Below, piece by piece: positions 3,229-42,173 of a DNA stretch of 64,000 bases (position 1 is its first letter; each line of letters opens with the position of its first letter). The stretch is from IMG/VR virus record IMGVR_UViG_3300031952_000001, positions 1 through 64,000 of that record, one strand, 5' to 3'. The position numbers and the translations under genes are program-made. The notes under the pieces are model-generated. The model searched no databases. It had not been told where the DNA came from and saw nothing but the letters and a program-made list of their open reading frames with translations.

Positions 3229-3257
3229 TAGTTGTTCGATTGGTACTTATGGGTCTC

Positions 3258-3285
3258 TTGACATCGTTCTTTTGATGGTTACATT
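3258..3285 (+). promoter_or_regulatory. sigma70-type promoter upstream of HNH gene (TTGACA-N16-TACATT)
   Basis: Consensus -35 and near-consensus -10 in an AT-rich intergenic region. Confidence 0.5.
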
Positions 3286-3292
3286 AGAGGTC

Positions 3293-5980: not shown

Positions 5981-6687
5981 GACGCAACGCTGGCGGGATC
6001 ACGGACGATGGCTTCAGCCGGCTCGCGTCTTTCGTGCAGGCCAAGGAAGAGGACAAGCCCGAGGAGGAGAAGGACTCGGACGAGGGTGGATCGGACAAGG
6101 ACATCAAGCAGGAGCTGGTCGAGTTCCTCAAGGACAATCCGAACCCCGAGGACGAGCTGGTCCACGAGTGGGCCGAGGAGAACGGCTACGAGGTGGACGA
6201 CATCGAGGCCCTCCTGTACGAGCTTGCCACGGACTACGTGGAGTCGAACGATCCGGACTCGGAGGACCTGATCCCCGGCGGCAAGGCCGACGATGTTCCC
6301 GACGAGGACCTCCCGATGGAGCAGATCCTGAAGGGGATCAAGGTCGAGATGGAGCACACGGACGACCCGGACCTCGCGAAGGAAATCGCGTCCGATCATA
6401 TTGAAGAATTTCCGGATGGGGATTACTACGACGCTCTGGCGGACATGGAAGACGAGCTGAAGAAGGAAGGCCGGCTCCCGGGCTGGCCGTCCTCGAAGCC
6501 TTCCGGCTGGGGCTGGCGCGAGGAGATCGCCCCTCCTCGGTGGACCCCCGAGATGGAGAGAGCGGAGGAACCCGACCCACGCGAAGGGTTTGGATCCTGT
6601 CCTGGATGCGGTCAGGATGTTCCTGATCTCCCGGAGGGGGAGCTGTGCGACGTGTGTGACCGTAAGACTCGGAACATGCAGGAGTAG
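5977..6687 (+). CDS. Acidic protein with DUF5661-like motif
   Basis: GIKVEMEHTDDPDLAKEIASDHIEEFPDGDYYDALADME resembles the G-x-x-VE-x-EH...DH...YY-x-x-L-x-x-ME motif (from memory); C-terminal CxxC/CxxC. Confidence 0.55.
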   Translation: MRRNAGGITDDGFSRLASFVQAKEEDKPEEEKDSDEGGSDKDIKQELVEFLKDNPNPEDELVHEWAEENGYEVDDIEALLYELATDYVESNDPDSEDLIPGGKADDVPDEDLPMEQILKGIKVEMEHTDDPDLAKEIASDHIEEFPDGDYYDALADMEDELKKEGRLPGWPSSKPSGWGWREEIAPPRWTPEMERAEEPDPREGFGSCPGCGQDVPDLPEGELCDVCDRKTRNMQE

Positions 6688-7956: not shown

Positions 7957-10461
7957 ATGGCAATCAGCATTTCGAAATATGTCGATCCAGGCGTGTACAT
8001 CGCGGAAGTGATTGTCCCTGGTGCGATTTCCGTCACTTCTGAGCGCACGCTGGGGATCATCGCCATCGCTCCGCGCACCCGTCGCAGTGTGGATGAGCCG
8101 GTCACCCGCGGGAAGATCTACGCGGAGGTGCTGACTCTGTCCGTGGGGTCTCCCCATGTGGGGACCTTGGCGAACACCTCGAACAGGTCCAGGAACAACG
8201 CGCAGCTGTACATGAACGGGAACCCCTTGGGGCTCGCGGACTGGCAGTTCCTGGCTGCGCGCCTGGTGGGCACCGAGTGGGCTGGCGCGACGGTGGACGT
8301 CTCCCTGGCGACCGGTACCCCCTACTTCACCCTGTCCCTCGACGGGAAGCGCGCCGTCACTCTGAACTTCGATGCCCTGGTGCCGCTGGTTGGCGGTGTT
8401 CAGGCGGTCGCGACTCCGACGGACATCTGCAACGCCATCAACTACGCCCTGGCGAATGCGCTCGGGCCGTTCTTCTCGATCTACGGCCTGACCTACGCCG
8501 CGGTGGCGACCCACGCGGTGGGCCTGGTGAATGAGATCATCACCCTCACGTCGCCCTCGACGGAGCCCACTTCCGATCTGAAGGTGTTCATCTCCCCGAA
8601 CGCGGCGCTCGACGGTGCGTCCACGATCTCGACCGCTGCGTGGACTCCCGCGGTGGGCGCGGGTGTTCAAGCCACCACACGTCTCCAGGTGTTCGACGCG
8701 GCGTACACATCGTCCGCGGTCTACACCTTGGACTACGTGTCGGTCGACGTGCTGGTCGATGCGCTGGACAATGCCGGCACCTCTACCCCGCTGTCGGACA
8801 TCAACTACCTCGGTTCGTACCCGGGCGGTGTGGACTACACGAAGAACACGGACTACGAAGTCGGCATCGCCAACGATGTCGACTGGGACGTGACTACCTG
8901 GGTGCAGGCGACGGCGACCACGTTGGATTTCGTCGCCTTCCCGCCGACCATCGTGGCGGCCACCAACGACAAGCTCCTGATGTCCATCAACAACCGCACC
9001 CAGGTCCTCGTGACCTTGACCCCGGGCGCTCCGACGACTCCGGCGATTGTGGCCGCGGACATCAACGCCGCGCTGGCCTCGATTGCGAGTGCGTACGGCC
9101 CGGAGTTCTCGCACATGGCGGTCGTCGTGGGCAACACGGTGCGGATCCGGTGCCCGGACGACTTCGAGAACTACCTCCCGGAGAAGGGTGTCGCCAGCTC
9201 GATTCAGTTCCGGGCGACCGCTGCGAACGCCTTCACGACGCTGTTCGGCGCGATCACGCTGCCCTACACGGCCCAGGGCACCGGGAAGCGACCGGCGTTC
9301 GGGACGAACTACTACTGCACGTACGACTACGTCCGCCCGGCCACGGACTACACGACGGGACACCGTGTGTACGATCCGGATCAGCTCTACCAGTACACGA
9401 CCAAGCTGACGATGCAGAACTACCTGGTCAACAAGCTCTGCGTGGCGGGGGAGATCGCGTTCGAGAACGGCATCTCCTCGATGTACCTCTTCCAGATCAA
9501 CGACTCGGTGGCCCCCGGCACCCCGACGCAGCTGGAGATCAACACCGCGCTCGACGCCGCGAAGGAGTATTCGACCGTCACGGACGTCGTCACCATCGAC
9601 ACGAGCCTGGACACCGCGGTGTACCAGATGCTCCACGTCGCGGATCAGTCGTCGATGCTCGAAAAGCACTACCGCCGCGGCTGGTTCAGCATGGCACGGA
9701 ACACGGACGTCGGTGATCCCGACACGCCGGACACGTTCGTCTACCGGTCGACCAAGACCTTGCAGCCGGGCAACACCTCCCCGGGCCGCGGCCGGCTGTT
9801 CCTGATCGCTCCGGGCAACGCGACCAGAACCATCAAGCTCGACACGAGCCAAGAGATCGATCTCAACGTGGACGGCACGTACATCGCCGTCGCCGTCGCG
9901 TCGGTGTTCACCGCCCTCCCGAGCCCCTCGTCGGCGCTCATCGGGCGCTTCATCACGGGCTTCAAGACCGAGGGCTTCGGGACGTACCTCCGCGGCGAGC
10001 GCCACACGCTGGCGGACAAGGGCGTTCTCGTGGTCACGCTCGACGCCGGCCGCCTGGTCATGCTCGACCCGATCTCCACCGAGGCCGGCGGTGCCAAGGT
10101 GGTGCAGTTCGAGGAGCCGGCCTCCAGCGCGCAGAAGGACGCGGTCACGAAGACCGTCGACACCCTGCTCGCGGGCAACGTCATCGGTGTGGTTCCGGAC
10201 GATCTGAGCGACTTCATTTCGGACTGCAAGAAGTGGATCTTGCTCGGCATCACGGCGAACATCACCAATGGCTCGATTGCGGCCTACCGCGACCAGTCGG
10301 GGCTGCCGCGTGACATCGACGCTACGACGGACATCGTGGTGTACCAGTCTACGACTGATCCCAGGACCTTCTACTTCAAGTATTGGTACAACCTGAAGTA
10401 CCCGGCCAAGAGGTTCTTCGGTGAATACTCGGTCGACAACCCGTTCTTCAGCCCCGCCTAG
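7957..10461 (+). CDS. Contractile tail sheath protein (834 aa)
   Basis: N-terminal YVDPGVY motif typical of sheaths; C-terminal sheath-like domain (...RTFYFKYWYNLKYPAKRF); followed by tube genes. Confidence 0.9.
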   Translation: MAISISKYVDPGVYIAEVIVPGAISVTSERTLGIIAIAPRTRRSVDEPVTRGKIYAEVLTLSVGSPHVGTLANTSNRSRNNAQLYMNGNPLGLADWQFLAARLVGTEWAGATVDVSLATGTPYFTLSLDGKRAVTLNFDALVPLVGGVQAVATPTDICNAINYALANALGPFFSIYGLTYAAVATHAVGLVNEIITLTSPSTEPTSDLKVFISPNAALDGASTISTAAWTPAVGAGVQATTRLQVFDAAYTSSAVYTLDYVSVDVLVDALDNAGTSTPLSDINYLGSYPGGVDYTKNTDYEVGIANDVDWDVTTWVQATATTLDFVAFPPTIVAATNDKLLMSINNRTQVLVTLTPGAPTTPAIVAADINAALASIASAYGPEFSHMAVVVGNTVRIRCPDDFENYLPEKGVASSIQFRATAANAFTTLFGAITLPYTAQGTGKRPAFGTNYYCTYDYVRPATDYTTGHRVYDPDQLYQYTTKLTMQNYLVNKLCVAGEIAFENGISSMYLFQINDSVAPGTPTQLEINTALDAAKEYSTVTDVVTIDTSLDTAVYQMLHVADQSSMLEKHYRRGWFSMARNTDVGDPDTPDTFVYRSTKTLQPGNTSPGRGRLFLIAPGNATRTIKLDTSQEIDLNVDGTYIAVAVASVFTALPSPSSALIGRFITGFKTEGFGTYLRGERHTLADKGVLVVTLDAGRLVMLDPISTEAGGAKVVQFEEPASSAQKDAVTKTVDTLLAGNVIGVVPDDLSDFISDCKKWILLGITANITNGSIAAYRDQSGLPRDIDATTDIVVYQSTTDPRTFYFKYWYNLKYPAKRFFGEYSVDNPFFSPA

Positions 10462-10486: not shown

Positions 10487-10933
10487 ATGCAAGTCCCGTA
10501 CACAGGAATTCGTACTAGCCATGCGATCTCCATCCGCGTGGGCAGCACGACCATCGGCCAGATCCAGACCTGGGCTCCGACCCAGTCGAGGACCATCACG
10601 CCGGCCTACGAGCTGCGCTCCGAGACTTCCGGAGAGGTGACTGAGAACATTCCCGGGAACGTCACGGGCCTGACGATCCAGGTGAGCCGCTACGACTTGT
10701 TCACCGCCAAGATGGAGCAGGTCTGGGGCACCTCGAAGGCGCTGTGGATGCTTTCGAATCAGAATATCCCCCTCACGGTCGAGGAGAAGTGGCGCAATCC
10801 GAACATGATCGTCGAGAAGTTCGTCTACGAGGGCTGCTGGTTCTCTCAGCTCGGGCGCAACATGCAGGCGCAGGGTGACAGGATCGTCCTCGTCAACGCC
10901 ACCCTCGCCTACGTCAAGTGCCGCCCGTACTAG
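10487..10933 (+). CDS. Tail tube protein, paralog 1
   Basis: 148 aa right after the sheath; IGQIQTW...YEGCWFSQLGR tube-like pattern; GGAGGA RBS. Confidence 0.8.
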   Translation: MQVPYTGIRTSHAISIRVGSTTIGQIQTWAPTQSRTITPAYELRSETSGEVTENIPGNVTGLTIQVSRYDLFTAKMEQVWGTSKALWMLSNQNIPLTVEEKWRNPNMIVEKFVYEGCWFSQLGRNMQAQGDRIVLVNATLAYVKCRPY

Positions 10934-10939: not shown

Positions 10940-11545
10940 ATGCCTGTACCGCGTACTGATCTCCGAACAAGTCACGCCATAACGCTTCGTGCAGCGGATA
11001 AGACGATAGGGCGGATCCAGAGCTGGGGTCCTTCGCAGGGCCGGGACGTCAAGCTCAAGTTCGAGATCAATGCGGTCGGTACCGGAGCCCCTATAGAGGC
11101 CGTCCCCGGCATTGCGACTTCCCAGGTTATTCAGGTGGCTCGCTACGATCTCTACGTTCAGAAAATGGAGGAGATCTGGGGTATGCCGAGGCCTCTGTGG
11201 GCCCTGACAGACCAGCACAACCCCATCGACATCGAAGAGAAGTGGATCAAGTTTGGAACGAAAGAAAAACCACTGATTCCGGGCATGGAGACTGTCACAA
11301 CTTCCTCCTTGCTGGATAAGGTCGGGTCGACGAAGTTCGGAAAAGCACTGGGGATCGGAACCGCGAACGAGCTGGGAGGCATAGACATCGGACCTGCCGG
11401 CGCTGGTCAGGAAATAACGGTTGAGAAGAACTGGTATTCGGGATGCTGGTTCACGAGCATGGGCCGTGTGATGCAGGCACAAGGAGACCGTTTAGTGCTC
11501 GTAAACGCCACTTTGGTGTATGTGAAGATGCGACGTTTGATGTAG
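10940..11545 (+). CDS. Tail tube protein, paralog 2 (with ~50-aa insertion)
   Basis: Colinear with paralog 1 (RTSHAI, IGRIQSW, YDL..KMEE.WG, QAQGDR.VLVNATL). Confidence 0.8.
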   Translation: MPVPRTDLRTSHAITLRAADKTIGRIQSWGPSQGRDVKLKFEINAVGTGAPIEAVPGIATSQVIQVARYDLYVQKMEEIWGMPRPLWALTDQHNPIDIEEKWIKFGTKEKPLIPGMETVTTSSLLDKVGSTKFGKALGIGTANELGGIDIGPAGAGQEITVEKNWYSGCWFTSMGRVMQAQGDRLVLVNATLVYVKMRRLM

Positions 11546-11600: not shown

Positions 11601-12131
11601 ATGTCGAACGAAACGACCAACCCCAAGAGAATATTGGACGATCTCGCGAGGGAACTCGACGGAGACTGCCTGGAGGACACCTTCACCTGGAAGGGCCGGA
11701 AGTTCAAGATCAAGCTCTTGAACGAGGAGGAGTCGAACTGGAGGAACGGGTTCGTGAACATGGGTAGTGGGTTCTCGACCATCACGTCGTGGCGGCTGCC
11801 TACCCTCGCCATCGGAATCCGGGAGATCGACGACGTCCCTGTGTTCGAGTTCTTCCGCTCCGAGTGGGAGGCGACCGAGAAGGGCCGGGAGGTCGTGCGT
11901 CTCATGGAAGGTCGCGGCACCTTCAGCATGAAGTATTTCTCTGCTGAGCACCTCATGCAGTACCTGGGGCGGCGTCCTCCCGAGGCTCTGGAGGAGATGT
12001 GGAAATACTACAAGATGCTGGAGGACCGTCGTGAGGAGGCCCAAGACAACGTAAAAAAATCCTCAGGGGAGGGTTCGGAGAAGGCCGAGAGGCCGAGTGG
12101 GACCGAATCTTCCCCGTCTGGAGAAGAGTAG
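11601..12131 (+). CDS. Tail assembly chaperone (G-like, short form)
   Basis: Between tube and tape-measure genes; contains a slippery site near its 3' end. Confidence 0.75.
   Translation: MSNETTNPKRILDDLARELDGDCLEDTFTWKGRKFKIKLLNEEESNWRNGFVNMGSGFSTITSWRLPTLAIGIREIDDVPVFEFFRSEWEATEKGREVVRLMEGRGTFSMKYFSAEHLMQYLGRRPPEALEEMWKYYKMLEDRREEAQDNVKKSSGEGSEKAERPSGTESSPSGEE
12053..12115 (+). promoter_or_regulatory. -1 programmed ribosomal frameshift signal (A AAA AAA + 13-bp stem)
   Basis: Heptamer 12053-12059, 6-nt spacer, GGGGAGGGTTCGG (12066-78) pairs with CCGAATCTTCCCC (12103-15); the -1 frame is open from 12035 to 12880. Confidence 0.85.
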
Positions 12132-12880
12132 TCTCCCGGTTCAAGATCAAAGCGAAGATCTTGACTCGGCGGATGATGTGTCTTGGCGACCCCCGGCTGA
12201 AGGGGATGAACGACACCCAGTGGGTGTTCGAGCTGGAGGCCATGAATCTTCAGGACAAGGAGAAGTATGACGACCTGCGCATGCTCTCCGACATCACGAA
12301 GAAGCAGATCATCTCCATGCTGGGGCTGAATCTGCTTCCCGTGGAGGACGAGAAGACTGGCCTGCTTCGTCAGCCCGAAGAGCACGAGTGCCTGCCCCTC
12401 GCCATCATGATCGGCAGGGACGACATCCTGGCGGCCATCAAAGAGCGCCAGGAGCAGTACGGCACTCAGGAAGAGGTTCGCGCACAGCTTGAGTCTTCTG
12501 ATGCGCTCATGGGATCCGGAAAGGCGGAAGATACGGGTGTTGTGGAGATGAGTCCTGACGAGCTGGAGGAGTTCATGAAGGATGAGGGGGACGTCGAGTT
12601 CGAGAACGCCCCTGAAGATCTCCGCAAGGCCATGAAGTGGGGCGGGCGCGATACCCAGATGCTCTTGGAGAACCTCGTGCTGTCCAAAGACGATCTTGGA
12701 GATGATCCTCTGGAGGATCTACCGGCAAGGACTTTGGGGAGGGCCCGTTCGGACATCAAGGATTCCCTGAAGACACGTCCAGTAGTCAGTGGCATCGAAG
12801 TCGAGGAGGTAGAGTTAAGGTCTACGAAGGGCCTTGAGGTAAAATCAGATCGACCTGTGGTGACGTTGGACATCGAGTGA
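12059..12880 (+). CDS. Tail assembly chaperone frameshift extension (T part of a ~426-aa GT-like fusion)
   Basis: -1 frame reads ILRGGFGEGREAEWDRIFPVWRRVVSRFKIKAKILTRRMM... with GC3-rich codons and continues into ORF 12161-12880. Confidence 0.8.
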   Translation: MLRGGFGEGREAEWDRIFPVWRRVVSRFKIKAKILTRRMMCLGDPRLKGMNDTQWVFELEAMNLQDKEKYDDLRMLSDITKKQIISMLGLNLLPVEDEKTGLLRQPEEHECLPLAIMIGRDDILAAIKERQEQYGTQEEVRAQLESSDALMGSGKAEDTGVVEMSPDELEEFMKDEGDVEFENAPEDLRKAMKWGGRDTQMLLENLVLSKDDLGDDPLEDLPARTLGRARSDIKDSLKTRPVVSGIEVEEVELRSTKGLEVKSDRPVVTLDIE

Positions 12881-12884
12881 GGGA

Positions 12885-15218
12885 ATGGCCGAGGTTCAGA
12901 CATACCTGCTCAAGTGGGACCTGGACAAGTTCCGTGACCAGATCGCGGACTCGCAGGCCACGTACACGAAATTCGGGTCCGCCCTGCGTGACCTTGTCGG
13001 AGCGGTTTCAGGAGACCTGACCGCCCTTCAGCAGCGTGCCTCGGCGGTCTCGTCTACCCTGGTAGGCCTCACTCCCCAGATCGAGCGGTCGGTTCAGACG
13101 TTGAGGGAGGGGTCTTCTTCGGCGAACCAACTGCTGGAGTCCATCGCGAGAAGCGGCTCCAGGATCGCAGCGGACATGTCCAGGGCGACCGCTGGGGCCC
13201 CTGGAGCGGGTAAGGGTCCCCAAGGAAGCCCTCCCGGTGTCGACAAGGCAGAAGCCCAGGTAGAGGGCGTAAAAGCGTCTGCCATCATCGCCTTGGACAT
13301 GGCGAATGAAGCCTTGTCCAAGGTGAGTGAGGCGCTGAAGATCATCGAGCGCAACAAGAAGGCCTTGAAAGCGGAGATGACTGCGGCCGAGAAGCTCATG
13401 AAGGATGAGCTGAAGAACGCTGCCGCCAAGGTCAAGGAGGTGGTCAGTCACATGCCCGGAGGGGTTCTGTCGAGCGGTCTCCTCGGCGGCCTTCTGGGGG
13501 CCATGATCCTGGGGTACACCGAGACGGACCGCGTCAAGGCCCTCTCCGGAGAGGTCCTGAACGTCTTTGAGGCTACGGGGGAGTCTCTGTCGTCCAAGGC
13601 TGGGATCAAGGCTCGGGAGTTCTTTACGGGTCCGAATGGTTTCGTAGAGAAGGCGCAGTGGTTCTATGGGATCTCGAAGGAAGAGTCCATGGGAGTCCTG
13701 AAGACCATGGTGGACGCCGGCTACAAGGGCAAGCAGATCAGTGCGTCGTTCAACAAGTCCCTCGGAGAGGTCGGTTCGAACGTTGCAGTTTTGTCCATGG
13801 CGGTGGACAAGCACTTCAACCAGGACACGGGGACCTCCATGAACAACATCATCCAGATCACGACGTCTCTGGGAGATTCTCTGAAGGACGCGACAGACAA
13901 GTACACCAGGCTCGCGTTTGCCGGCCAGCGAAGCGCCATGGGGGTCAGCAAGTTTACGGACTCCGTGATCTCTGGAGCGTCGGCGATGCAGCAGTACGGT
14001 GTCGACGTGGAAGATGTCGCGAGCATGATGAGCACTGTTCAGAAGCACTACCAGGACATGGGACTGAGCCCTCAGTACGCAGGAGACCGGGCTACGCAAG
14101 CCGTCTCAGGCCTGATGACCAGCATGGCGAACATGAACCCTGCGGTGAAGGCTCTCGTCATGCAGCGGATCAACCCCGGTCTCTCCGGTCTGGACGCTCG
14201 GCAGGCGTTCGAGGACGGGTTCAAGAGGGTGATTTCCGGAGAGGACAAGAACTTTGCGTCGAAGGCCGCTATGGCGTTGTACCAGTACGCGGCTGAAGGA
14301 CGTGACCGGAGCGGTGCTATAAAAATCTTGGAGGGTGTTGCCGGCATGCAGAACCAGCCGGCCGCTACTTTGGTGGACACGAAGGGTGAGCTTGTCAAGG
14401 TGAATGCCCTCACGGAGTTGAATCAAAAGGAGACGGCCAACCTGAAGAATTCTCTCATAACCGAAGGTGAGAGGCTCTCTGCTCTCGCTAAGATGCAGCG
14501 GGAGCTGTACAAGGCGATTGCTTCTATAGGCAAGGGGCTTTTGAAGATCCTCACCGGCCTCGTTGGGGTCCTTGTGATGGGCTTTAAGTCTCTTCCTGTG
14601 CTCATCATGGCCCTTATACCAGGCTCTCAGGTTGGGTGGGCTGAGCTAAATGAGCTATCCCGAAAATTCGATGCTCTGAGCACGAGCATAAGCTCCGGTG
14701 CTCAGGACATGAAGACCGGTTTTGGAATGCTTCCTGACATTTTCGGTAAGGAATTTTCAGATGATCTGAAGCCCTTGCTCGATGTGCTCAAGTACGACGT
14801 GCCGAAGTACGCCAGTGGGGGTGTAGAAATGCCCTCCCCGTTTGAATCTATGGAGGAGAACGCTAGAAGAGTTAAGGCCATAAAAGAGGAAATGATAAGT
14901 GATATTACAGAACTTGTTGCTGACGAAGATACACGTAACATGTTGATCGGTGAAATCAAGTCCGGTGTTGTTACGTCGCGAGGTCTTGCGTCCTACATTA
15001 AGAGTCGAGAAGACGCGAAGACTCGGGAACGGTTTGAAGGGAAAAAAGAAGCAGTAACCCCCAAACTCAAAATGAAAGACGTTGGCCTCAAGTATAAACC
15101 CCTCAACACGGCAGAGATACGGGCTGCCGCTAAGAAGGGAGCAATACTTACAGCAGGGCAGCAGAGGTCTTTGACGTTGAAGGTGGACAGGGACATCCTC
15201 AAGCACATGGGGCAGTAA
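12885..15218 (+). CDS. Tape measure protein paralog 1 (777 aa)
   Basis: Follows the chaperone; long helical A/S/G/K-rich protein; homologous to the next two genes. Confidence 0.75.
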   Translation: MAEVQTYLLKWDLDKFRDQIADSQATYTKFGSALRDLVGAVSGDLTALQQRASAVSSTLVGLTPQIERSVQTLREGSSSANQLLESIARSGSRIAADMSRATAGAPGAGKGPQGSPPGVDKAEAQVEGVKASAIIALDMANEALSKVSEALKIIERNKKALKAEMTAAEKLMKDELKNAAAKVKEVVSHMPGGVLSSGLLGGLLGAMILGYTETDRVKALSGEVLNVFEATGESLSSKAGIKAREFFTGPNGFVEKAQWFYGISKEESMGVLKTMVDAGYKGKQISASFNKSLGEVGSNVAVLSMAVDKHFNQDTGTSMNNIIQITTSLGDSLKDATDKYTRLAFAGQRSAMGVSKFTDSVISGASAMQQYGVDVEDVASMMSTVQKHYQDMGLSPQYAGDRATQAVSGLMTSMANMNPAVKALVMQRINPGLSGLDARQAFEDGFKRVISGEDKNFASKAAMALYQYAAEGRDRSGAIKILEGVAGMQNQPAATLVDTKGELVKVNALTELNQKETANLKNSLITEGERLSALAKMQRELYKAIASIGKGLLKILTGLVGVLVMGFKSLPVLIMALIPGSQVGWAELNELSRKFDALSTSISSGAQDMKTGFGMLPDIFGKEFSDDLKPLLDVLKYDVPKYASGGVEMPSPFESMEENARRVKAIKEEMISDITELVADEDTRNMLIGEIKSGVVTSRGLASYIKSREDAKTRERFEGKKEAVTPKLKMKDVGLKYKPLNTAEIRAAAKKGAILTAGQQRSLTLKVDRDILKHMGQ

Positions 15219-15224
15219 TTTTAG

Positions 15225-17531
15225 ATGGTGGAACAGTTCTACATAGATCTTGATTTGACCGGGCTGGAGAGCCAGCTCAGTGATGTGCAGCATTCGTACA
15301 CCGAGCTGGGAACCGCCATCCAGCAGATCACGTCCGACTACAAGAAGTCCCTTTCTGACATGGCGGGTCTTGCGACTCAGACCGTTGCCCCGATGGACAT
15401 CCCTCCTACACTGGAACCCGGCCTGAACCAGCTGATGGCTCAAATGAACGAGATGCAGAGGAACGTCCCTGCTGTGCAGGCTGCGTTGAAACAGTTGGAG
15501 GGTCTGCATGAGGCTCGTAGAGCCGCAGCAGCTTCTGCGGGCCCCCGTGTTGCGGGGAATCAGCCCCCTCCAGGTCTTCCGGATCCGGAGCGTATTCGTG
15601 CCGTCGCTGAGCAGGGGCAGGAGCTGGCTTTGAAGACCCTGGCGGCGGTGGACAAGGCGTTGGACGAGAACGAGAGCTGGAAGTCCCGCGTACAGAAGCT
15701 CATCGAGTCGGAGATGAAGAAGGTTCGTGCGAAGATCAGTGAAGTTTTGAGTAACCTTCCAGGACAGGTTTCTACAGGATTTTTTGGGGCCCTCATGGGC
15801 TCTATGGTGCTGGGGTACACGGAAAAAAATCGCCGTCGAAAAGAGATGGGGGAGATGGCGAACATGTTCGAGGGTGGTGTCAACGCCCTGTTTTCGAAAG
15901 GCTCCCGGGATGTTGTTCGAAAGTTCTCGCAGTGGGGGGAGAACGCGCAGTGGCAGTGGGGTGTTGGCCGAAAAGAACTTCAAGGTGGGATAAAGCTGAT
16001 GGTGGACAACGGTCTCACCCAGGCGCAGATGTCCAAGAGTTTTGGTAGGGGTCTGGGCGATGTCGGTGAGAACGTGGTCACACTGACTATAGGTCTTGCA
16101 AAGCATTACAACTTCTCTACTTCTGATGCTATGGAAGACGTTGTGAGCCTGGTTCGGGATTACGGGATGGGGCTCTCGAACGCGGCAGACCTCATGGTGA
16201 AGATGGCTGCCGCGGGTCAGGGAAGTTCTATAGGTGTGAAGAACTTTTCTCGAATCGTATTGGCTTCTGCGGACCCACTGTCGCGCATGGGCGTCAAAGC
16301 TGAAGATGTCGGTGTTTTCGTGGATCGGTTGTTGAAGGGCTACAAGTCTGCGGGGTTGGACGCTCGGTATTCTGGACGACAAGTCGAGGGTGTGGCGGTC
16401 GACATGATGACAGCGTTCAGTAACATGGACAATGCGATGAAGCTCGCCATCGCCCGGGACATGTATAAGGACCCGGAAGGGGACGCGATGGGGCTCTTGA
16501 TTCGTTTTGAAGATGGCGTTACTCGATTGGCGCGGAAGGAAAGCTCTGACTTTTTGGACAAGCTGATTACTTCGTTCTTCCACGTCGTGGTCGACCGGTC
16601 GACCAACGAGAGGTCCCCTGCCATCCAGGTGATCATGTCCTCTCTGAATGTGGAGAACACCACGGCTTCCAGGATGTTCGACTTCAGGGCTATTCTGGAG
16701 AAAGGTGGTGAGCTGAACTCGATGGACAAGAAGTCCAAGAGGGAATTCCGTAATGCGTTTGTTTACGAGTCTGAACAAGTTTCCGATCTGTTCAAGACGA
16801 AGAGGGAGATGATCCTTGGCGTCGGTAAGATGGGCGAGGGCATTCTTGCCCTCATTGTCGACATGGTCGGTATGGCAATGATCGGAATGCAGGGTATGGC
16901 AGCTTCTGCAAGCGCTCCAAAGGGTCAGCAGGCTGCTGTGAACATGCTCATCTACTTTAAGCAGTTGGAGATCTATCGCAACATGGGTCGCGATTTGGCG
17001 CTCATCAAGGAGGGCGCAGGTCTGGCGGTGGGCGCTCTTCCAAAAGAGTTTGCGGACACCTTTGCTCCTGTAGTGGAAGCCTTTAAATCGGATGTTTTTG
17101 AAGGATCCGGACTTTACAACCAGGCATACAATCAAGTATTGGCGCACCCTATAGATAATTTGAAGAGTGTTATGGGGTTTGCTGAGAGTATGCAGCCTTG
17201 GAATCTTATTAAGAGTAAAGAGTCTTCCACTCCTGGTACGCCGAGTGCTCTGGATATAGTAACTGGGGATTTTCTAGGAAATGGTCCCGGTAGCTCTGAG
17301 CTGGTGGCGGCGTACCTAAGGAGGCAGGCTGCTGCAAAACTCCAGGTAAAGACGCCCCCGGAGGTGAAGAAGGTGAAAGACAAGCCGCGGGTAGACCAGG
17401 CGGATGAATCCGGAACACCGAAAAAGAATCCTCAGGAACCTGAAGTTTCCGGGTTGGGCCTGGCGGAGAGACTCATGCAAGCGCGCCAAGCTATCGCGGC
17501 TGAGGACTCAAACAGGATGAGCACCCAGTGA
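15225..17531 (+). CDS. Tape measure protein paralog 2 (768 aa)
   Basis: Colinear with paralog 1 (LGYTE.NR...GE..N; AQW..G; MVD.G). Confidence 0.75.
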   Translation: MVEQFYIDLDLTGLESQLSDVQHSYTELGTAIQQITSDYKKSLSDMAGLATQTVAPMDIPPTLEPGLNQLMAQMNEMQRNVPAVQAALKQLEGLHEARRAAAASAGPRVAGNQPPPGLPDPERIRAVAEQGQELALKTLAAVDKALDENESWKSRVQKLIESEMKKVRAKISEVLSNLPGQVSTGFFGALMGSMVLGYTEKNRRRKEMGEMANMFEGGVNALFSKGSRDVVRKFSQWGENAQWQWGVGRKELQGGIKLMVDNGLTQAQMSKSFGRGLGDVGENVVTLTIGLAKHYNFSTSDAMEDVVSLVRDYGMGLSNAADLMVKMAAAGQGSSIGVKNFSRIVLASADPLSRMGVKAEDVGVFVDRLLKGYKSAGLDARYSGRQVEGVAVDMMTAFSNMDNAMKLAIARDMYKDPEGDAMGLLIRFEDGVTRLARKESSDFLDKLITSFFHVVVDRSTNERSPAIQVIMSSLNVENTTASRMFDFRAILEKGGELNSMDKKSKREFRNAFVYESEQVSDLFKTKREMILGVGKMGEGILALIVDMVGMAMIGMQGMAASASAPKGQQAAVNMLIYFKQLEIYRNMGRDLALIKEGAGLAVGALPKEFADTFAPVVEAFKSDVFEGSGLYNQAYNQVLAHPIDNLKSVMGFAESMQPWNLIKSKESSTPGTPSALDIVTGDFLGNGPGSSELVAAYLRRQAAAKLQVKTPPEVKKVKDKPRVDQADESGTPKKNPQEPEVSGLGLAERLMQARQAIAAEDSNRMSTQ

Positions 17532-20365
17532 CAGGCATTATCGACATCAAGCAGCTGGACGAAGCGCGCTTCAGGTTCACTGAGCTGGGTGACGCCATCA
17601 GCGGTATGTCCCAGGCGAACGTCGAGTCGATGGACTCGTTGATAGCGAGCCTTAAAGAGGGCTTCAAGTCCGTTATTGAGGAGGTGTCTCACGATCCGCG
17701 ACTGATCGGAGGGGGTAGAGTGGCCGGCGTCAGCGAGCAGTACGTTTCCTCCATCGCAGGGAAGTTCAGCGGCATGTCGCAAGGGGTGACGCACTCCTTT
17801 GAGAGCTTGGAGCGCACCTTGACGGGTGTTGAGAAGAGCTTTGGTACGATGGCGGATGACGCTCGTGCCAAGATCTCGGGGGTCGGTGGCGAGGCGGATC
17901 ATGATGGCGAGGGTGCTGACACCGAAGGTGAGGCGAAGGATCCGAAGCAAAAAGGCACGGACAAGAAGAAGAAGGGCATCGCCGGCATCGTTCAAGCTGA
18001 GGGTCGGAATCTCAAGGGCCGTGTTCAAGGCATGCTGTCGCGCATGAAAATACCAAACAAGGTCGGCGCTGTCATGGCCGGTGGGCTCGGCATCCTCACC
18101 TACGGGTACATGGACCGGAATCGCGTCCGTGCCGAGGCGGGAGAGGTCAAGAACATCCTCATCGCGGCGTACGACGATGGTGTGAAGGGTTCCCTGGCTG
18201 CGGGTACTGCGAGCCTTTCGAGAATGCAGGAGGCCTTTCAGAAGTACAAGGGGATCCAGCGCGAGGAGATCCAGAACACCGCGCAGGCTCTTGTGGATGG
18301 TGGCTTCAGTGTGGACCAGATGCTTCGGGAGGTGAGTGGGAACATTCGCGATGTGCAGTCCAGTGCGTTGTCGACGACCCTCGCCTTGGACAAGATGTTT
18401 GAGCTGCCGGGCGGCGAGAGCGCGAAGCGCATGGTCTCCATGATGGCGCTCTACGGCAAGAACTCGAACGATGCTCGGGAGTCCCTCACGAGGATGTACC
18501 TGGTAGGTCGGGACTCCGGAATCGGAGCGATGCAGTTCGTGAAGAACGTCGAGGACGCCAGCTCTGAGCTGTCGGTGATGGGCTTCAACATCGACCATGT
18601 CGTCGACATCTACGCCTCAGTCACGGAGTCGTTCGAGAAGATGGGCGTCCCCAAGCAGTTTGCCGGTCGTCAGGCGGCGCTGGGCATGCAGCAGATCTCC
18701 AGTGGGATCGCCAAGATGTCTGACAACTGGATGGTTGTTCTCGGTGAGCGGATGGGTCACGGCCGCGGATTGGAAGCCCGCCAGGGGATGATGGATGCCT
18801 TCACTCGGGTCTTGAAAGATCGCGACGTCAACGAGCTTCAGAAGATCATCTCTACGGTTTGGGACATGGCCTTGAAGGCAACCGGTGGGAACGAGGAGGC
18901 TGCTCGGTACTACGTTGAGAAGCAGGTGGGTTGGGGCTACGAAGGTGCTCGTGTGGTTCAGAACATTGGACGCATGGCTAAGGAAGGCCGTATGGTCGAG
19001 TCGGCGAAGGCCACCGCGGACAGCTTTGCGATCTTGAAGGAGTCCTTCGAAACGGAGAAGGAGAAGGCCAGCCAATTTGAACTCATGATGAACACCTGGA
19101 TGAAGGGCTTGGCTTTTATGGGGCAGGCGATTCTTGGCATGGTTGTGCAGTTCATTGCATGGATGATTGCCTACTTCAAGGCCCTTCCTCAGTTTTTTTC
19201 GAATTTGAAGAACTTGGATTTTGAGGCCAACACTCGTCTTGCGGCGGATTTAAATCACACTTTCTGGAACATGGGTGCACATCAGGATCAACTCAAATCT
19301 GCTGCATCACAGATGGCTAACACAGCAGGGGCGATGTTTACGGATGTTTTGGGTAATTCTATGCGCTCCCTGGACACCGCTTGGAACTTCGATCCTACGG
19401 GGAAGAGACCCCCAGCCCCTGCTTCGGCTCCTGGAGGGGGTGGTGCAGGAGGTGGGGGTGGGGGTGGTGCCCCCCGCATCATCACGATTCCAGTGCCCGT
19501 GGCGGGGGCGGGAGGCAGCCAATCCATCCCAGCTACACCACCTCCGGCGTCCGTTGTGGGGGGTGTTCCTACGGACCAGTGGGCGGGGGGTGGAGTTACC
19601 TTGAGTGTCGAGGGTCCTGACCCCTTAGGGAACCTCACGGTCATGCTCGGAGGAAATTGTCCCCGGTGCGGTTACAGCTTTGCAGAAGGGGGAGCAGCAG
19701 CTCCAGAAACCGAATCTCCCGGTGGGGATCCATGGGGTCACTACGAGAGTGGCGCTGCGGGTGCTACTGCCGGTCCCGCCACTGCCGCTGCTGCTAGTGT
19801 CGGCCCTGGCTCGGCCCCAGGCCCTGGAGCCAGTGCTGGTGGTGGAGCGGGTGCTCCTGCGGCCATGTCAGGCTACCAGGGCGCTCCAGGGACATTCTCT
19901 AGCATGGGTTTGGCCCCTGAAGGAAAGTTCTCAGGTGACGACGTAGAGGCTCTGGCGAGGATGATGCAATCTGAAACCGGCGGCCTGCGCGCAGACAGGA
20001 AGAATGAGCAGCTCGGTACTGCGTGGACGGCGTTGAATAGGCGGGGTGCACGGGAGGGTGGGGGGAGTCTTCAGAAAACCATAACTAAGGACAAGGGTTG
20101 GGGCAAGAGTGATGCTGGCGTGCTTCCCGGGGGGCGGCGGCAGTTTGCTTCCGGGGCTAAACCTGGTCAGCCTATGATAGACTTTGCACGATCCATTTTG
20201 AGAGGTGACGAAGGAACTGCGGACCCAACCGGAGGTGCCACGTCATTCGTACATCGTCCAATTGGAGCGAAGTATGGTCATAAAAATGCTCCAGGGGAGA
20301 AGGAATTAGTTTCGTTTGCAATTCCAAAGGATCCTAAGCACCGGGAAGTCACATTCTTCAAATAG
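17528..20365 (+). CDS. Tape measure protein paralog 3 (945 aa) with C-terminal SleB/Hydrolase_2-like cell-wall hydrolase
   Basis: Same core; Gly/Ala/Pro linker; VEALARMMQSE...TAWTALNR...DPTGGATSF is SleB-like with the catalytic Glu present. Confidence 0.75.
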   Translation: MTGIIDIKQLDEARFRFTELGDAISGMSQANVESMDSLIASLKEGFKSVIEEVSHDPRLIGGGRVAGVSEQYVSSIAGKFSGMSQGVTHSFESLERTLTGVEKSFGTMADDARAKISGVGGEADHDGEGADTEGEAKDPKQKGTDKKKKGIAGIVQAEGRNLKGRVQGMLSRMKIPNKVGAVMAGGLGILTYGYMDRNRVRAEAGEVKNILIAAYDDGVKGSLAAGTASLSRMQEAFQKYKGIQREEIQNTAQALVDGGFSVDQMLREVSGNIRDVQSSALSTTLALDKMFELPGGESAKRMVSMMALYGKNSNDARESLTRMYLVGRDSGIGAMQFVKNVEDASSELSVMGFNIDHVVDIYASVTESFEKMGVPKQFAGRQAALGMQQISSGIAKMSDNWMVVLGERMGHGRGLEARQGMMDAFTRVLKDRDVNELQKIISTVWDMALKATGGNEEAARYYVEKQVGWGYEGARVVQNIGRMAKEGRMVESAKATADSFAILKESFETEKEKASQFELMMNTWMKGLAFMGQAILGMVVQFIAWMIAYFKALPQFFSNLKNLDFEANTRLAADLNHTFWNMGAHQDQLKSAASQMANTAGAMFTDVLGNSMRSLDTAWNFDPTGKRPPAPASAPGGGGAGGGGGGGAPRIITIPVPVAGAGGSQSIPATPPPASVVGGVPTDQWAGGGVTLSVEGPDPLGNLTVMLGGNCPRCGYSFAEGGAAAPETESPGGDPWGHYESGAAGATAGPATAAAASVGPGSAPGPGASAGGGAGAPAAMSGYQGAPGTFSSMGLAPEGKFSGDDVEALARMMQSETGGLRADRKNEQLGTAWTALNRRGAREGGGSLQKTITKDKGWGKSDAGVLPGGRRQFASGAKPGQPMIDFARSILRGDEGTADPTGGATSFVHRPIGAKYGHKNAPGEKELVSFAIPKDPKHREVTFFK

Positions 20366-20431
20366 AATTGTTTAGGGGATATTGGATCTATTGTAGTGCA
20401 AAAAAAGTTCTAGAAGAAAAAGGTTTGAAAC

Positions 20432-21187
20432 ATGCCTACATTTTTGGAAAATATGAAGCAGGCTTTCGGTCCCAGCAACGGGATGCCGGTGCCTACAGTA
20501 GAGCGGATTCTCGACCGCATTCTGAACCCGTACGAAGATGTTGCGTACCGAGTGCCGTTCATCTTCACTTCGGATCAGAGGATCAAGGACGCGATCCCTC
20601 CAGTGCGGATGAAGATGAATCCGGAGACCGTGACGTTCTCGCAGAACAAGAGGATCACGCGGCGTGATACGCAGTCCGGTGCGGTCTTCTTCCACTGGAC
20701 GAACGCCAAGGGGCAGAACAACGATGTCATCAACATCAGCTTCGCCGGCTCCACGGGGAACATCAACCTGAGGACCGGGGCCCAGCGCAACAGCAAGATT
20801 GCGTCCGACCAGATAAAGAGGTTCCGAGACTGGATGAAGTCCGCTACGAAGCAGGAAGGTCTCGACGTGGAGACGCTGGCGGGTGCGTCTAAGCTCGTGA
20901 ATTTCTGGAATCTCTACAACCTGACCGTGGAGCCGGTGATCGATCCATTCAAAGGCTACCAGAACAAGTTCTACTTCATGTACTCCAGCCCGATCCTTGG
21001 AAACGCCTTGATTCAGTTCATCGGCCATTTCGACAAGGTCTTGGAGTTCACGGACGACGCGGCCAACCCGTTCAACAAGAACTACTCCTTCAGCTTCGTG
21101 GCGACGGAGACGATTCCGTCCATGGATGCCATCTTCAGGTACATCTCTCAGGCCTTGGGTACTCAGTTCTTCAATGAGTTGGAGTAG
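20432..21187 (+). CDS. Baseplate tube-initiator/hub-like protein
   Basis: MKMNPETVTFSQNKRITRRDT...HW...INISFAGSTG pattern typical of post-tape-measure tube-fold proteins. Confidence 0.6.
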   Translation: MPTFLENMKQAFGPSNGMPVPTVERILDRILNPYEDVAYRVPFIFTSDQRIKDAIPPVRMKMNPETVTFSQNKRITRRDTQSGAVFFHWTNAKGQNNDVINISFAGSTGNINLRTGAQRNSKIASDQIKRFRDWMKSATKQEGLDVETLAGASKLVNFWNLYNLTVEPVIDPFKGYQNKFYFMYSSPILGNALIQFIGHFDKVLEFTDDAANPFNKNYSFSFVATETIPSMDAIFRYISQALGTQFFNELE

Positions 21188-26087: not shown

Positions 26088-27518
26088 ATGGTTATCCAGA
26101 GAAAAACAGTAGCTCAGTTCGAGGATCAGCTTTCCAACGGGGTCGCGTCTCGTGACGAGACCATCGATACCTACATCGGCTCGATCCGAGATCTTTTCAT
26201 CACACCGCCCGCTGAGGTCATGAAGAGCGTCCACGACAACATCGTGTATCTCAGCCAGCTGACCAGCATGATCAACGCGGAGCGGTTCAATCCCGAGGAT
26301 CTCGACGCCATCGTCTACAACGAGAACGTCATCCGGTGGACCGGATCAGGGTCGTATTCGATTGTGACCTTCTCGCGCCTGCTGCCTCCGACGACAGACA
26401 TCCCGATCCCGGTAAACTTCCCTCTGTCGACCTCTCAGGATCCTCGGACGGGAACCGTTGTGAACTTCAGGACCATCGAGTCACAGGTCATGTATGGGCC
26501 ACTGACGGTTCCGTCTTCGTCGTACTACAACGCGACGACGGAGCGCTACGAGATCGATGTCGCGGTGGCGAGCGTCGTCGTAGGCACGGAGGCTTCCGTC
26601 GGGGCCTACACCATCACGCAGTTCCGAAGAGCGTTTCCGGACTTCGAGTACGTCACGAACAAGTCGGCGACGACGAGTGGCCGTGGGGTCGAGACGAACA
26701 CCGACTTGGCGATCAGGTACCAGACCCGGATCACCGGCAACCAAGAGGCGACTCCGTCGGGGCTCAAGCTGTTCTCTCTGGACAACTTCAGCAACATCTC
26801 GGATGCCTACGTCGTCTACGGAACCGACGTCAACTTGGAGCGCCACACCTCCGATGCCGGCGCGGTGGACGAGTGGGTCAAGACATCTGCACCACTGACG
26901 CACTCCTACGACACGTACTACAGAGCCTTGCGTGAGCTGATCCCCTTGCCCAAGCAGCCGCTCGTTTCGATCATCTCGGTTTCCAGCGGGGCCACCTACT
27001 ACACCGAGGGTACGGACTTCGAGAAGTCCACGGGTGACGGGATCTACGCCTACAGCGACCGGGGGCACGACGGCATTCGATTCCTCATCGGAGGGGCGGC
27101 CCCCGCGCCCAACGCTCCGTTGAAGATCGTGTACTCCTACAACTCGATGATCAACATCCTCACGGCGTACTACAAGCAGCAGGAGTATTACGTCATGGGC
27201 TCGGACATGCTCTTCCGCTGGGCTCAGCAGAAGAACATTGTCATCGAGGCGGAGCTGAAGGTTGGCTCCGGCAACCCGGACACCGTACTGTCGTTGGTCA
27301 GAGCCAAGATTCTGAGCTACATCAACAACTTGAAGTTGGGTGCTGACGTCGAGGAGTTCGACATTGACTCCCAGGTAGCTCTCGTCGGAGGTGTAGACAA
27401 CTGGGTGTATGTCACTCTGGCTGTGAAGGGCTCTTCTGGCGTGGGTGACATTCCGATAGGTCCGATGGAGTACGCCTACTTGGATGAGGCGGATCTCATC
27501 ATCAGCCTCGTTTCGTAG
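26088..27518 (+). CDS. Baseplate J-like protein
   Basis: GSIRDLFI...DLDAIVYNE...GRGVETNTDLAIR pattern of the baseplate J family. Confidence 0.75.
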   Translation: MVIQRKTVAQFEDQLSNGVASRDETIDTYIGSIRDLFITPPAEVMKSVHDNIVYLSQLTSMINAERFNPEDLDAIVYNENVIRWTGSGSYSIVTFSRLLPPTTDIPIPVNFPLSTSQDPRTGTVVNFRTIESQVMYGPLTVPSSSYYNATTERYEIDVAVASVVVGTEASVGAYTITQFRRAFPDFEYVTNKSATTSGRGVETNTDLAIRYQTRITGNQEATPSGLKLFSLDNFSNISDAYVVYGTDVNLERHTSDAGAVDEWVKTSAPLTHSYDTYYRALRELIPLPKQPLVSIISVSSGATYYTEGTDFEKSTGDGIYAYSDRGHDGIRFLIGGAAPAPNAPLKIVYSYNSMINILTAYYKQQEYYVMGSDMLFRWAQQKNIVIEAELKVGSGNPDTVLSLVRAKILSYINNLKLGADVEEFDIDSQVALVGGVDNWVYVTLAVKGSSGVGDIPIGPMEYAYLDEADLIISLVS

Positions 27519-33630: not shown

Positions 33631-33640
33631 GGAGGATTCT

Positions 33641-42103: not shown

Positions 42104-42113
42104 CACATCCCCA

Positions 42114-42142: not shown

Positions 42143-42173
42143 GTGGGCTTTTTTCCGGTTGACAGGATTCAGC

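What the first reader, a model, noticed from the sequence alone, without database searches (positions are those of the whole stretch)
12885..20365. Three tandem, diverged tape-measure paralogs with an in-register core (359/360/359 aa): candidate hetero-oligomeric tail ruler
Seen: after the tail chaperone come three long helical genes (777, 768, 945 aa) that align colinearly. A shared motif (LGYTETDRVKALSGEV / LGYTEKNRRRKEMGEM / YGYMDRNRVRAEAGEV) starts at residues 209/196/192 (nt 13509, 15810, 18101). The equivalent residue of a downstream hydrophobic segment (GFK / GMQ / YFK; nt 14586, 16890, 19178) lies 359, 360 and 359 codons later, despite low identity. Established: tailed phages normally have one tape-measure gene acting as a homo-oligomer, at roughly 0.15 nm of tail per residue. 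Inference: such tight length conservation suggests the three chains run side by side as a heterotrimer (or 2+2+2 hexamer) with divided labour. Alternatives are serial end-to-end rulers or alternative tail lengths.
Basis: partly seen in the sequence, partly recalled or inferred. Interest (0 to 1): 0.85.

Follow-up and report, generated by a model that had tools for sequence, protein, structure and literature searches.

The report
Multi-copy tape measure genes in jumbo phage
An uncultured 212 kb phage, and a wide clade of its relatives, encode two or three diverged side-by-side copies of the tail "tape measure" gene where known phages have one, and only one copy carries a cell-wall-cutting enzyme, which suggests but does not prove a mixed-subunit tail ruler.

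Summary
ORFs A (12885-15218, 777 aa), B (15225-17531, 768 aa) and C (17528-20365, 945 aa) are real, colinear paralogs (BLASTP E 4e-73, 3e-33, 1e-21). The motifs start where stated. The spacing is 357/358/357 residues, not 359/360/359.

They are tape-measure-like by position, all-alpha models, flanking hydrophobic segments and fold: 86 and 89 BFVD matches at E<=1e-3, named top hits nearly all tape measures. Curated HMMs (PF10145, PF20155) stay below threshold.

The family has 465 representative clusters. Among 13 distinct loci, 8 have three copies, 4 have two and 1 distant GenBank virus has one. None of the 150 best-scoring representatives is a fusion of two cores. Gene junctions are tight (-4 to +7 nt). 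The tree indicates repeated duplication, or concerted evolution. In every multi-copy locus one paralog is the long type; a lytic-domain hit of differing family (Hydrolase_2, M23, CHAP/SLT) is on record for it in most.

Core length is no better matched within genomes than between them (p=0.40). A parallel hetero-oligomer remains the best guess (about 0.4). An end-to-end ruler, or one ruler plus tape-measure-derived cargo, is not excluded. It is a new variant of a known kind.

The parts
12885..15218 (+). Paralog A, short-type tape-measure-family protein, 777 aa
   Evidence: ORF. Homology to B and C. AF2 model all-alpha. Foldseek BFVD: 86 hits at E<=1e-3, named top hits tape measure or minor tail proteins. 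Orthologs in L001, L003, L005, L017 and L023.
15225..17531 (+). Paralog B, short-type tape-measure-family protein, 768 aa
   Evidence: ORF. Homology. Forms its own orthologous clade (100/100) inside the short-type clade. The gap after A is 6 nt.
17528..20365 (+). Paralog C, long-type tape-measure-family protein, 945 aa, with extra C-terminal modules
   Evidence: ORF. GTG start overlaps B's stop by 4 nt. AF2 model. Foldseek BFVD: 89 hits at E<=1e-3, tape measures on top. Member of the C-type clade, support 100/99.
13443..14618 (+). Conserved core of A, from hydrophobic segment H1 through hydrophobic segment H2
   Evidence: Alignment A2. pLDDT 80-89 over about 205-500. Core HMM E 1e-156.
15744..16922 (+). 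Conserved core of B
   Evidence: Alignment A2. Core HMM E 1e-150.
18035..19210 (+). Conserved core of C
   Evidence: Alignment A2. pLDDT 80-93. Core HMM E 6e-152.
13452..13520 (+). Hydrophobic, Gly-rich segment H1 of A (residues 190-212)
   Evidence: Kyte-Doolittle scan. Weaker in B and C.
14514..14627 (+). Hydrophobic segment H2 of A (residues 544-581). Equivalents are B 529-561 and C 525-554.
   Evidence: Kyte-Doolittle scan. Lies within a long helix in the models.
19598..19687 (+). Small beta unit of C (residues about 691-720) with a conserved GNCPRCG motif, between two disordered linkers
   Evidence: AF2 strands 691-697 and 703-708. The motif is nearly invariant in 50 C-type proteins. Function unknown.
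19895..20362 (+). C-terminal alpha/beta domain of C (residues 790-945), a probable SleB-type cell-wall hydrolase
   Evidence: pLDDT 90-97. PF07486 Hydrolase_2 matches 2 of 6 orthologous domains, best E 2.6e-7, and the C-type proteins of L015 and, weakly, L011. The window copy itself has no direct hit.
7957..10461 (+). Context: putative tail sheath, 834 aa
   Evidence: By position and strong conservation only (alignment A7). No family or PDB hit.
10487..10933 (+). Context: putative tail tube, 148 aa
   Evidence: phrog_985 virion structural protein, E 2.8e-6. The ortholog in L011 has a weak PF26461 Phi812_tail_tube hit.
10940..11545 (+). Context: tube paralog, 201 aa
   Evidence: 36% identical to the 148-aa protein, E 5e-42.
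11601..12880 (+). Context: two acidic small genes (176 and 239 aa), candidate tail assembly chaperones by position only
20432..21187 (+). Context: putative tube initiator, 251 aa
   Evidence: The ortholog in L003 has a weak PF23980 Phage_tail_tube_init hit. Orthologs lie next to the family in all loci.
26088..27518 (+). Context: baseplate wedge, Baseplate_J-like
   Evidence: PF04865 at 23.8 bits against a cut-off of 21.1. phrog_6 E 1.6e-25.

Best explanation
A, B and C are three diverged paralogs of one tail tape-measure-type protein of an uncultured, baseplate-bearing (probably contractile-tailed) jumbo phage. That part is well supported, about 0.9. Each has the same plan: a helical N-flank of about 170-185 aa, a Gly-rich or hydrophobic segment, a helical core of about 390 aa, a hydrophobic helix, and a C-flank. 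Only C adds a small beta unit and a cell-wall hydrolase domain. My proposed mechanism is inferred, about 0.4. The three are made together from one tightly coupled operon. With the upstream acidic proteins acting as chaperones, they assemble side by side as a mixed oligomer on the hub and tube initiator. The tube and sheath polymerise around this complex, so tail length is set by one paralog length (about 115 nm at about 0.15 nm per residue) and not by the sum. At infection the complex is expelled. The C subunit's hydrolase cuts peptidoglycan, and the hydrophobic helices of all subunits help form the membrane passage. Having the bulky enzyme on only a subset of the chains divides the labour and eases packing in the narrow lumen. 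Two-copy relatives would form mixed oligomers of a different ratio.
For: Paralogy. Tape-measure identity: the genes lie between tube-like genes and a tube-initiator-like gene, a large hub-position gene and Baseplate_J. The models are all-alpha. BFVD gives 86 and 89 hits at E<=1e-3, the named ones almost all tape measure or minor tail proteins. The same C model finds nothing below E 0.03 in 350,542 PDB chains, so the BFVD hits are not generic helix matches. PF10145 and PF20155 recur as sub-threshold hits over the core. Lytic C-terminal domains, typical of tape measures, occur in family members. For co-assembly: multi-copy loci occur in 12 of 13 distinct loci. Junctions of -4 to +7 nt with ATGA/TAATG overlaps are found in most loci. 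All paralogs keep the same N-flank length class and a shared N-terminal motif. Duplication appears to have recurred, each time leaving one lytic copy. None of the 150 best-scoring representatives, drawn from 1.84 billion proteins, exceeds 1045 aa, so none is a fusion of two full cores, although fusing would need only a small change at the junctions. The single-copy relative's protein (669 aa) is the size of one paralog, not of the sum. Published structures show tape measures as parallel coiled-coil trimers, sometimes hexamers, with the C-terminus on the spike (PMC11329794).
Against: There is no direct evidence of interaction, stoichiometry, virion presence or tail length. No multimer prediction was possible. 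Curated tape-measure HMMs are below threshold, and profile comparisons with TP901-1 TMP and P2 gpT are not significant (E 0.021-0.42). Core-length matching within genomes is no better than between genomes. In L006 the N-flanks of the two paralogs differ by 85 residues, so strict register at the N-end is not universal. Two-copy and one-copy relatives show that a 1:1:1 trimer is not required by the tail design. A 1:1:1 trimer would break the threefold symmetry of the hub. In L009 and L014 one paralog is separated from the other two by the tube-initiator gene.
Confidence: 0.4

Rival explanations
1. One paralog is the ruler and the others are cargo. In this reading one paralog (probably a short type) is the length-determining tape measure. 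The others are tape-measure-derived proteins carried in the tube lumen or hub and ejected into the host. C would deliver the cell-wall hydrolase and A or B would act mainly as membrane-inserting pilot proteins.
For: A tape-measure-related protein packaged inside a contractile particle as an effector with an exchangeable C-terminal module has been shown experimentally for Streptomyces Sle1 (PMC13277306). Here the C-terminal module of the long paralog is likewise exchangeable between lineages: Hydrolase_2, M23, CHAP, SLT and glucosaminidase. A single-copy relative exists, so one copy is enough to build a tail of this type.
Against: All paralogs retain the complete architecture, including the N-flank and N-terminal motif, with no reduction to a cargo-like fragment. 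All are kept over long divergence in the same tightly coupled operon. The lumen has little room for full-length extra chains unless they run alongside the ruler, which merges this reading with the hetero-oligomer model.
Confidence: 0.25
2. Segmented serial ruler. Each paralog forms its own homotrimer and the trimers stack end to end in the tube. C sits at the hub end, and the tail length reflects the sum of about 2490 residues (about 370 nm).
For: Tape measures commonly lengthen by internal duplication. This is established knowledge; see PMC3271669, listed. In most loci the gene order places the enzyme-bearing copy last, as the tip-proximal C-terminus would be in one long chain. Very long tails exist in some jumbo phages, for example 0305phi8-36 (PMC2147016).
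Against: None of the 150 best-scoring representatives is a fusion of two full cores, although fusion would be trivial and harmless under this model. In L010 the enzyme-bearing copy comes first. All paralogs keep homologous N-termini rather than complementary head-to-tail ends. The model implies a 3.7-fold range of tail length among relatives that share otherwise conserved tail genes: 669 aa in the single-copy virus against 2490 aa here.
Confidence: 0.2
3. Alternative rulers. The paralogs are used one at a time, giving tails of different length or properties in different hosts or conditions.
For: The short paralogs (768-777 aa) and the long one (945 aa) differ in length.
Against: A and B are nearly the same length, so they would give the same tail. 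The operon is tightly coupled, with overlapping stops and starts and no internal regulatory gaps. The extra length of C consists of disordered linkers and globular domains, not ruler helix.
Confidence: 0.05
4. Not tape measures at all. In this reading they are a different class of helical membrane-active virion or non-virion proteins that merely sit in the tail module.
For: No curated Pfam, PHROG or NCBIfam model reaches threshold. Profile comparisons with two characterised tape measures are not significant. TM-scores of the fold matches are low, 0.2-0.35.
Against: No other tape-measure candidate exists in the tail module between the tube and the baseplate genes. The fold hits are specific to tape measures and extend over 500-700 columns. 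The position, size, hydrophobic segments and lytic C-termini all fit.
Confidence: 0.05

Closest known systems
TP901-1-type tail tape measure proteins (Pfam PF10145 PhageMin_Tail / TIGR01760 core), e.g. Lactococcus phage TP901-1 TMP
   Same: It sits in the same position in the tail module. It is long and all-alpha, with a central region of short helical hairpins flanked by hydrophobic segments. The best fold matches include proteins labelled 'TP901 family, core region'. Weak HMM and hhalign matches fall on the same PF10145 region, TP901-1 residues 167-244.
   Different: Sequence similarity is below every curated threshold. TP901-1 and all characterised relatives have a single gene, whereas this clade has two or three diverged paralogs with one core each.
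Tape measures of contractile systems solved as parallel homotrimers (diffocin TMP, PMC11329794)
   Same: It is a helical protein expected to fill the tube lumen from the hub or spike (C-terminus) to the collar (N-terminus). This gives the physical model for a parallel oligomer.
   Different: The solved example is a homotrimer of one gene product. Here a mixed assembly of paralogs is proposed and unproven.
Tape measures with lytic domains (e.g. mycobacteriophage TM4, Staphylococcus phiIPLA35; cited in PMC12619734 and PMC11329794)
   Same: Paralog C and its counterparts carry a peptidoglycan hydrolase at the C-terminal end.
   Different: In those phages every chain of the homo-oligomer carries the enzyme. 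Here only one of the two or three paralogs does, and the enzyme family differs between lineages.
Sle1-type tape-measure-related effectors of actinobacterial contractile injection systems (PMC13277306)
   Same: It is a tape-measure-derived protein with transmembrane segments and an exchangeable C-terminal functional module, packaged in a contractile particle.
   Different: Sle1 is cargo of a bacterial phage-tail-like particle and pairs with an adaptor (Sle2). Here the proteins are in a phage genome, keep the full tape-measure layout, and no adaptor was identified.
Virus Rctr197k (GenBank KX853510), a metagenome-assembled 197 kb virus
   Same: It is the only GenBank record with a family member. 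It has the same tail-module gene order.
   Different: It has a single 669-aa copy, annotated only as 'similar to hypothetical protein'.

Membership tests
Tail tape measure protein (functional class) | The gene lies in the tail module between the tube and chaperone genes and the tube-initiator, hub and baseplate genes. | tested here: met
   Upstream lie tube-like genes (phrog_985; weak PF26461 in an ortholog). Downstream lie a tube-initiator-like gene (weak PF23980 in an ortholog) and Baseplate_J. The order is conserved in all loci. The neighbours' identities rest partly on weak hits.
Tail tape measure protein (functional class) | A long, predominantly alpha-helical protein with a fold like known tape measures. 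| tested here: met
   The AF2 models of A and C are all-alpha apart from C's C-terminal modules. BFVD gives 86 and 89 matches at E<=1e-3, dominated by annotated tape measures. The PDB control gives nothing significant.
Tail tape measure protein (functional class) | Protein length determines tail length, and the protein occupies the tube lumen. | not testable with these tools
   The phage is uncultured and known only from metagenomes. There is no EM, proteomics or genetics.
Canonical tape measure organisation (one gene, homo-oligomer) | A single tape-measure gene per tail module. | tested here: not met
   The window has three family members and no other in 64 kb. Of 13 distinct loci, 8 have three copies, 4 have two and 1 has one.
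Pfam PF10145 PhageMin_Tail / TIGR01760 TP901-family core | A match to the family HMM at the curated gathering score. | tested here: not met
   There is no hit for A, B or C at E<=0.1 and none in NCBIfam. Among 44 family members, 7 have sub-threshold hits, best E 2.2e-4; one example scores 17.6 bits against a cut-off of 33.2.
Pfam PF10145 PhageMin_Tail / TIGR01760 TP901-family core | Profile-level homology to a characterised member (TP901-1 TMP). | tested here: inconclusive
   hhalign gives E 0.056 with the 14-sequence profile and 0.021 with the 160-sequence profile, aligned to TP901-1 residues 167-244. Against P2 gpT it gives E 0.33-0.42. The template side was a single sequence, so power was low. 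The attempt to build a diverse template alignment returned only hits >=89% identical to the query.
Pfam PF20155 TMP_3 | A match to the family HMM. | tested here: inconclusive
   Three of 44 members match, best E 4.3e-5. None is from the window itself.
Pfam PF07486 Hydrolase_2 (SleB/CwlJ-type cell-wall hydrolase), for the C-terminal domain of C | A match to the family HMM. | tested here: inconclusive
   The window's own domain has no hit at E<=1. Two of 6 orthologous domains match, best E 2.6e-7. The L015 C-type protein has a recorded hit and L011 a weak one. The window domain aligns to these with 20 invariant positions. A profile search of PDB sequences found nothing. Catalytic residues were not examined.

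The most novel reading that the evidence does not exclude
This clade of jumbo phages builds an obligately heteromeric tape measure. In three-copy phages one chain each of A, B and C would run in parallel in the tube lumen. In two-copy phages the ratio would be two to one, or three plus three. A single enzyme-bearing chain would break the threefold symmetry of the hub. The state would have evolved repeatedly from a homo-oligomer by tandem duplication and subfunctionalisation. That would make it the first known tail ruler assembled from several gene products.
Probability: 0.35. Interest if true: 0.8.

Novelty: new variant of a known kind. Interest (0 to 1): 0.62.

Why it matters
The tape measure is the textbook case of a molecular ruler, and it is always described as one gene product forming a homotrimer or homohexamer. 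Three things point to a functional reason for mixing different chains in the tail lumen: a large, widespread phage clade keeps two or three diverged copies, seems to have reached that state more than once, and always has a single long-type copy, with a lytic-domain hit on record for it in most loci. If the chains co-assemble, this bears on several open questions. One is how a threefold hub templates an asymmetric ruler. Another is how much cargo the lumen can hold. A third is how the ejected complex divides wall digestion and membrane channel formation. Practically, the family escapes Pfam, PHROG and NCBIfam annotation. The profile built here would therefore let tape measures be annotated in many metagenomic jumbo-phage genomes. 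At least one recent survey of such genomes reported finding none (PMC12619734); whether that lineage is related was not tested.

Tried and rejected
- Direct family scans of A, B and C against Pfam, PHROGs and NCBIfam gave no usable hit.
- tblastn of A and C, and megablast of the 22.7 kb tail region, against 50,697 GenBank phages found no match.
- A profile of the full-length family against PDB sequences returned only designed coiled coils and TPR repeats, which I take as compositional noise.
- hhalign against TP901-1 TMP and P2 gpT, with 14- and 160-sequence query profiles, was not significant.
- A database search seeded with TP901-1 TMP, meant to build a diverse template alignment, returned only hits >=89% identical to the query and was useless for that purpose.
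- Foldseek of the C model against PDB found nothing significant and did not pick up the C-terminal domain, because the helical part dominated the query.
- Sequence and profile searches of PDB with the putative sheath, hub, initiator, tube and C-terminal hydrolase domain found nothing.
Five single-protein scans from other branches found nothing.
- Four literature searches for multiple, duplicated or heteromeric tape measures found no prior description. Phage Shady's 'two tape measure' phrase refers to chaperones, and the 0305phi8-36 split gene was attributed to a sequencing frameshift.
- I considered and rejected a programmed-frameshift chaperone upstream of A: the shifted frames show no extension.
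- I considered and rejected the within-genome length-matching argument.
- The marginal PF07223 UBA-like hit in C (23.0 bits against a cut-off of 22.8) lies inside the helical core, and I regard it as spurious.
Full report
**1. Observation**

The window is the first 64 kb of a 211,982-bp IMG/VR contig, UViG_3300031952_000001. GC is about 58% and essentially all real genes are on the + strand.

They are unmistakable paralogs:

| Pair | Identity | Aligned length | E-value |
|---|---|---|---|
| A/B | 28% | 647 aa | 4e-73 |
| A/C | 25% | 468 aa | 3e-33 |
| B/C | 22% | 404 aa | 1e-21 |

The shared motif starts at residues 209/196/192, as stated. The aligned residue of the downstream hydrophobic segment lies 357/358/357 residues later.

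**2. What the proteins look like**

All three share one plan:
- a helical N-flank of about 170-185 aa with a shared N-terminal motif;
- a Gly-rich or hydrophobic segment;
- a core of about 390 aa built of many short helices and modelled with confidence (pLDDT 80-93);
- a long hydrophobic helix and a further long helix;
- a C-flank of about 200 aa in A and B, and 384 aa in C.

C's extra length has four parts. The first is a disordered linker. The second is a small beta unit with a conserved GNCPRCG motif. The third is a second linker. The fourth is a very confident alpha/beta domain at residues 790-945.

That last domain is probably a SleB-type cell-wall hydrolase. PF07486 matches two of six orthologous domains (best E 2.6e-7) and other C-type proteins. 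The window's own copy has no direct hit, so the assignment is by transitivity.

**3. Are they tape measures?**

Curated models say nothing at threshold, and no GenBank phage matches A or C. The positive evidence has four strands.

- **Position.** The genes lie after a conserved 834-aa gene (sheath by position only), two tube-like genes and two acidic small genes. They lie before a tube-initiator-like gene, a large hub-position gene and a Baseplate_J wedge protein.
- **Fold.** The A and C models give 86 and 89 BFVD matches at E<=1e-3, and the named ones are almost all tape measure or 'minor tail' proteins aligned over 500-700 columns. As a control, the C model finds nothing below E 0.03 in the PDB.
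- **Weak HMM hits.** PF10145 (7 of 44 members) and PF20155 (3 of 44) recur below threshold over the core.
- **Typical accessories.** The family shows flanking hydrophobic segments and lytic C-termini.

Profile comparison with TP901-1 TMP and P2 gpT was not significant. I therefore file these as tape-measure-type by fold and context, not as members of PF10145.

**4. Relatives**

An exhaustive profile search found 465 representative clusters at E<=1e-3, 201 of them at E<=1e-30. The 150 best-scoring ones have lengths that look bimodal, about 740-830 and 900-1045 aa. None is longer than 1045 aa, so none is a fusion of two full cores.

I examined 13 distinct loci:

| Copies | Loci |
|---|---|
| Three | window, L001, L003, L005, L017, L023, L009, L014 |
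| Two | L006, L011, L013, L010 |
| One | Virus Rctr197k (GenBank KX853510), a single 669-aa copy |

Junctions between paralogs are -4 to +7 nt in most loci, many with ATGA or TAATG overlaps. That is consistent with coupled translation.

**5. Evolution**

A 160-tip tree splits the family into two groups. One is a long C-type clade. The other is a short-type clade in which A and B are sisters, next to an unduplicated short type.

A careful 27-protein tree rooted on the single-copy virus adds three points:
- The two L010 genes are each other's closest relatives (92/86).
- The three genes of the L009/L014 lineage form their own clade (84/89). Its enzyme-bearing copy is sister to one of its own short copies (100/99*).
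- B arises inside the short-type clade (100/99*).

Either tandem duplication happened repeatedly, or co-resident paralogs homogenise each other. I could not separate these two possibilities.

In every multi-copy locus one paralog is the long type, with a C-flank of 343-495 aa against 191-275 aa in the others. A lytic-domain hit is on record for that copy in most loci. The enzyme family differs between lineages:
- Hydrolase_2 in the C-type clade;
- Peptidase_M23 in L010;
- CHAP or SLT in L009/L014.

In L009/L014 the tube-initiator ortholog sits between the first and second paralog.

**6.

The core is a folded domain of 378-399 aa in all 27 proteins examined, including the singleton.

Permutation tests show that co-resident, anciently diverged paralogs are no better matched in length than proteins from different genomes:
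- Short versus C-type core length: p=0.10, or 0.34 after thinning related genomes.

The significant result over all loci (p=0.0025) is driven by the lineages whose paralogs are recent or homogenised. The length argument therefore fails.

**7. Mechanism**

I still rank a parallel hetero-oligomer first, at about 0.4, but on other grounds:
- near-universal co-occurrence of paralogs;
- a tightly coupled operon;
- the shared N-flank and N-terminal motif;
- recurrence of the 'one enzyme-bearing copy' pattern;
- no fused forms among the best-scoring representatives, although fusion would be trivial (fusion would be harmless for a serial ruler but harmful for a parallel one);
- a singleton that matches one paralog in size, not the sum;
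- the solved precedent of tape measures as parallel trimers with the C-terminus at the spike (PMC11329794).

The rivals are:
- one ruler plus tape-measure-derived cargo (0.25; precedent Sle1, PMC13277306);
- a serial segmented ruler (0.2);
- alternative rulers (0.05);
- not a tape measure at all (0.05).

What is shown: paralogy, architecture, fold class, synteny, copy-number distribution and junctions. What is inferred: lumen location, co-assembly, stoichiometry, tail length and enzyme activity.

**8. Novelty**

Four full-text searches found no description of multi-gene or heteromeric tape measures. The searchable library is incomplete, so absence there is not proof.

I rate this a new variant of a known kind. 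The family is a divergent tape-measure type, and its organisation as two or three conserved paralogs departs from the one-gene homo-oligomer rule.

Noticed in passing
window 10487-10933 and 10940-11545: The putative tail tube gene (148 aa) and the next gene (201 aa) are paralogs: 36% identity, E 5e-42, and the second has an insertion of about 50 aa. Both are conserved in relatives. The tube gene is thus also duplicated in this tail module.
   Followed up: partly
window 3191-4192 and 32620-33630: Two HNH / endonuclease VII-like genes (phrog_1035) are inserted in the structural region. They are paralogs of each other (44% identity over 142 aa, E 9e-35) and are likely homing endonucleases. Rctr197k also has an annotated homing endonuclease in its structural module.
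   Followed up: partly
window 41967-43721: A single 584-aa ORF combines 5'-3' exonuclease domains (PF02739, PF01367) with a C-terminal uracil-DNA glycosylase superfamily domain (PF03167).
   Followed up: no
window 19598-19687 (C residues about 691-720): A small beta unit with a nearly invariant GNCPRCG motif sits between two disordered linkers. It is conserved in 50 C-type proteins, and its function is unknown.
   Followed up: no
L009 6777-7553 and L014 11380-12168: In one lineage the ortholog of the window's 251-aa tube-initiator-like gene (37% identity, E 1.6e-43) lies between the first and second tape-measure paralog instead of after the last one.
   Followed up: partly
window 20366-20431; L001 17407-17472: A 66-nt non-coding gap follows paralog C in both the window and L001, although the genes before it are tightly packed. 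The window copy is AT-rich, which may mark a promoter or an operon boundary. It was not analysed.
   Followed up: no
window 33623-38389: A 1588-aa protein has right-handed beta-helix and NosD-like regions (PF13229, PF05048). It is probably a tail fibre or spike with depolymerase-like architecture.
   Followed up: no
window 5977-6687: A 236-aa protein carries DUF5661 (PF18905, E 9e-9) just upstream of a 387-aa gene in the head-gene region. The same domain is found at the same place in L001 and L006.
   Followed up: no
literature (PMC12619734): A 2025 survey of another metagenomic jumbo-phage lineage ('moraphages') reported that no tape-measure gene could be identified. I did not test whether that lineage is related to this one or carries this family.
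   Followed up: no
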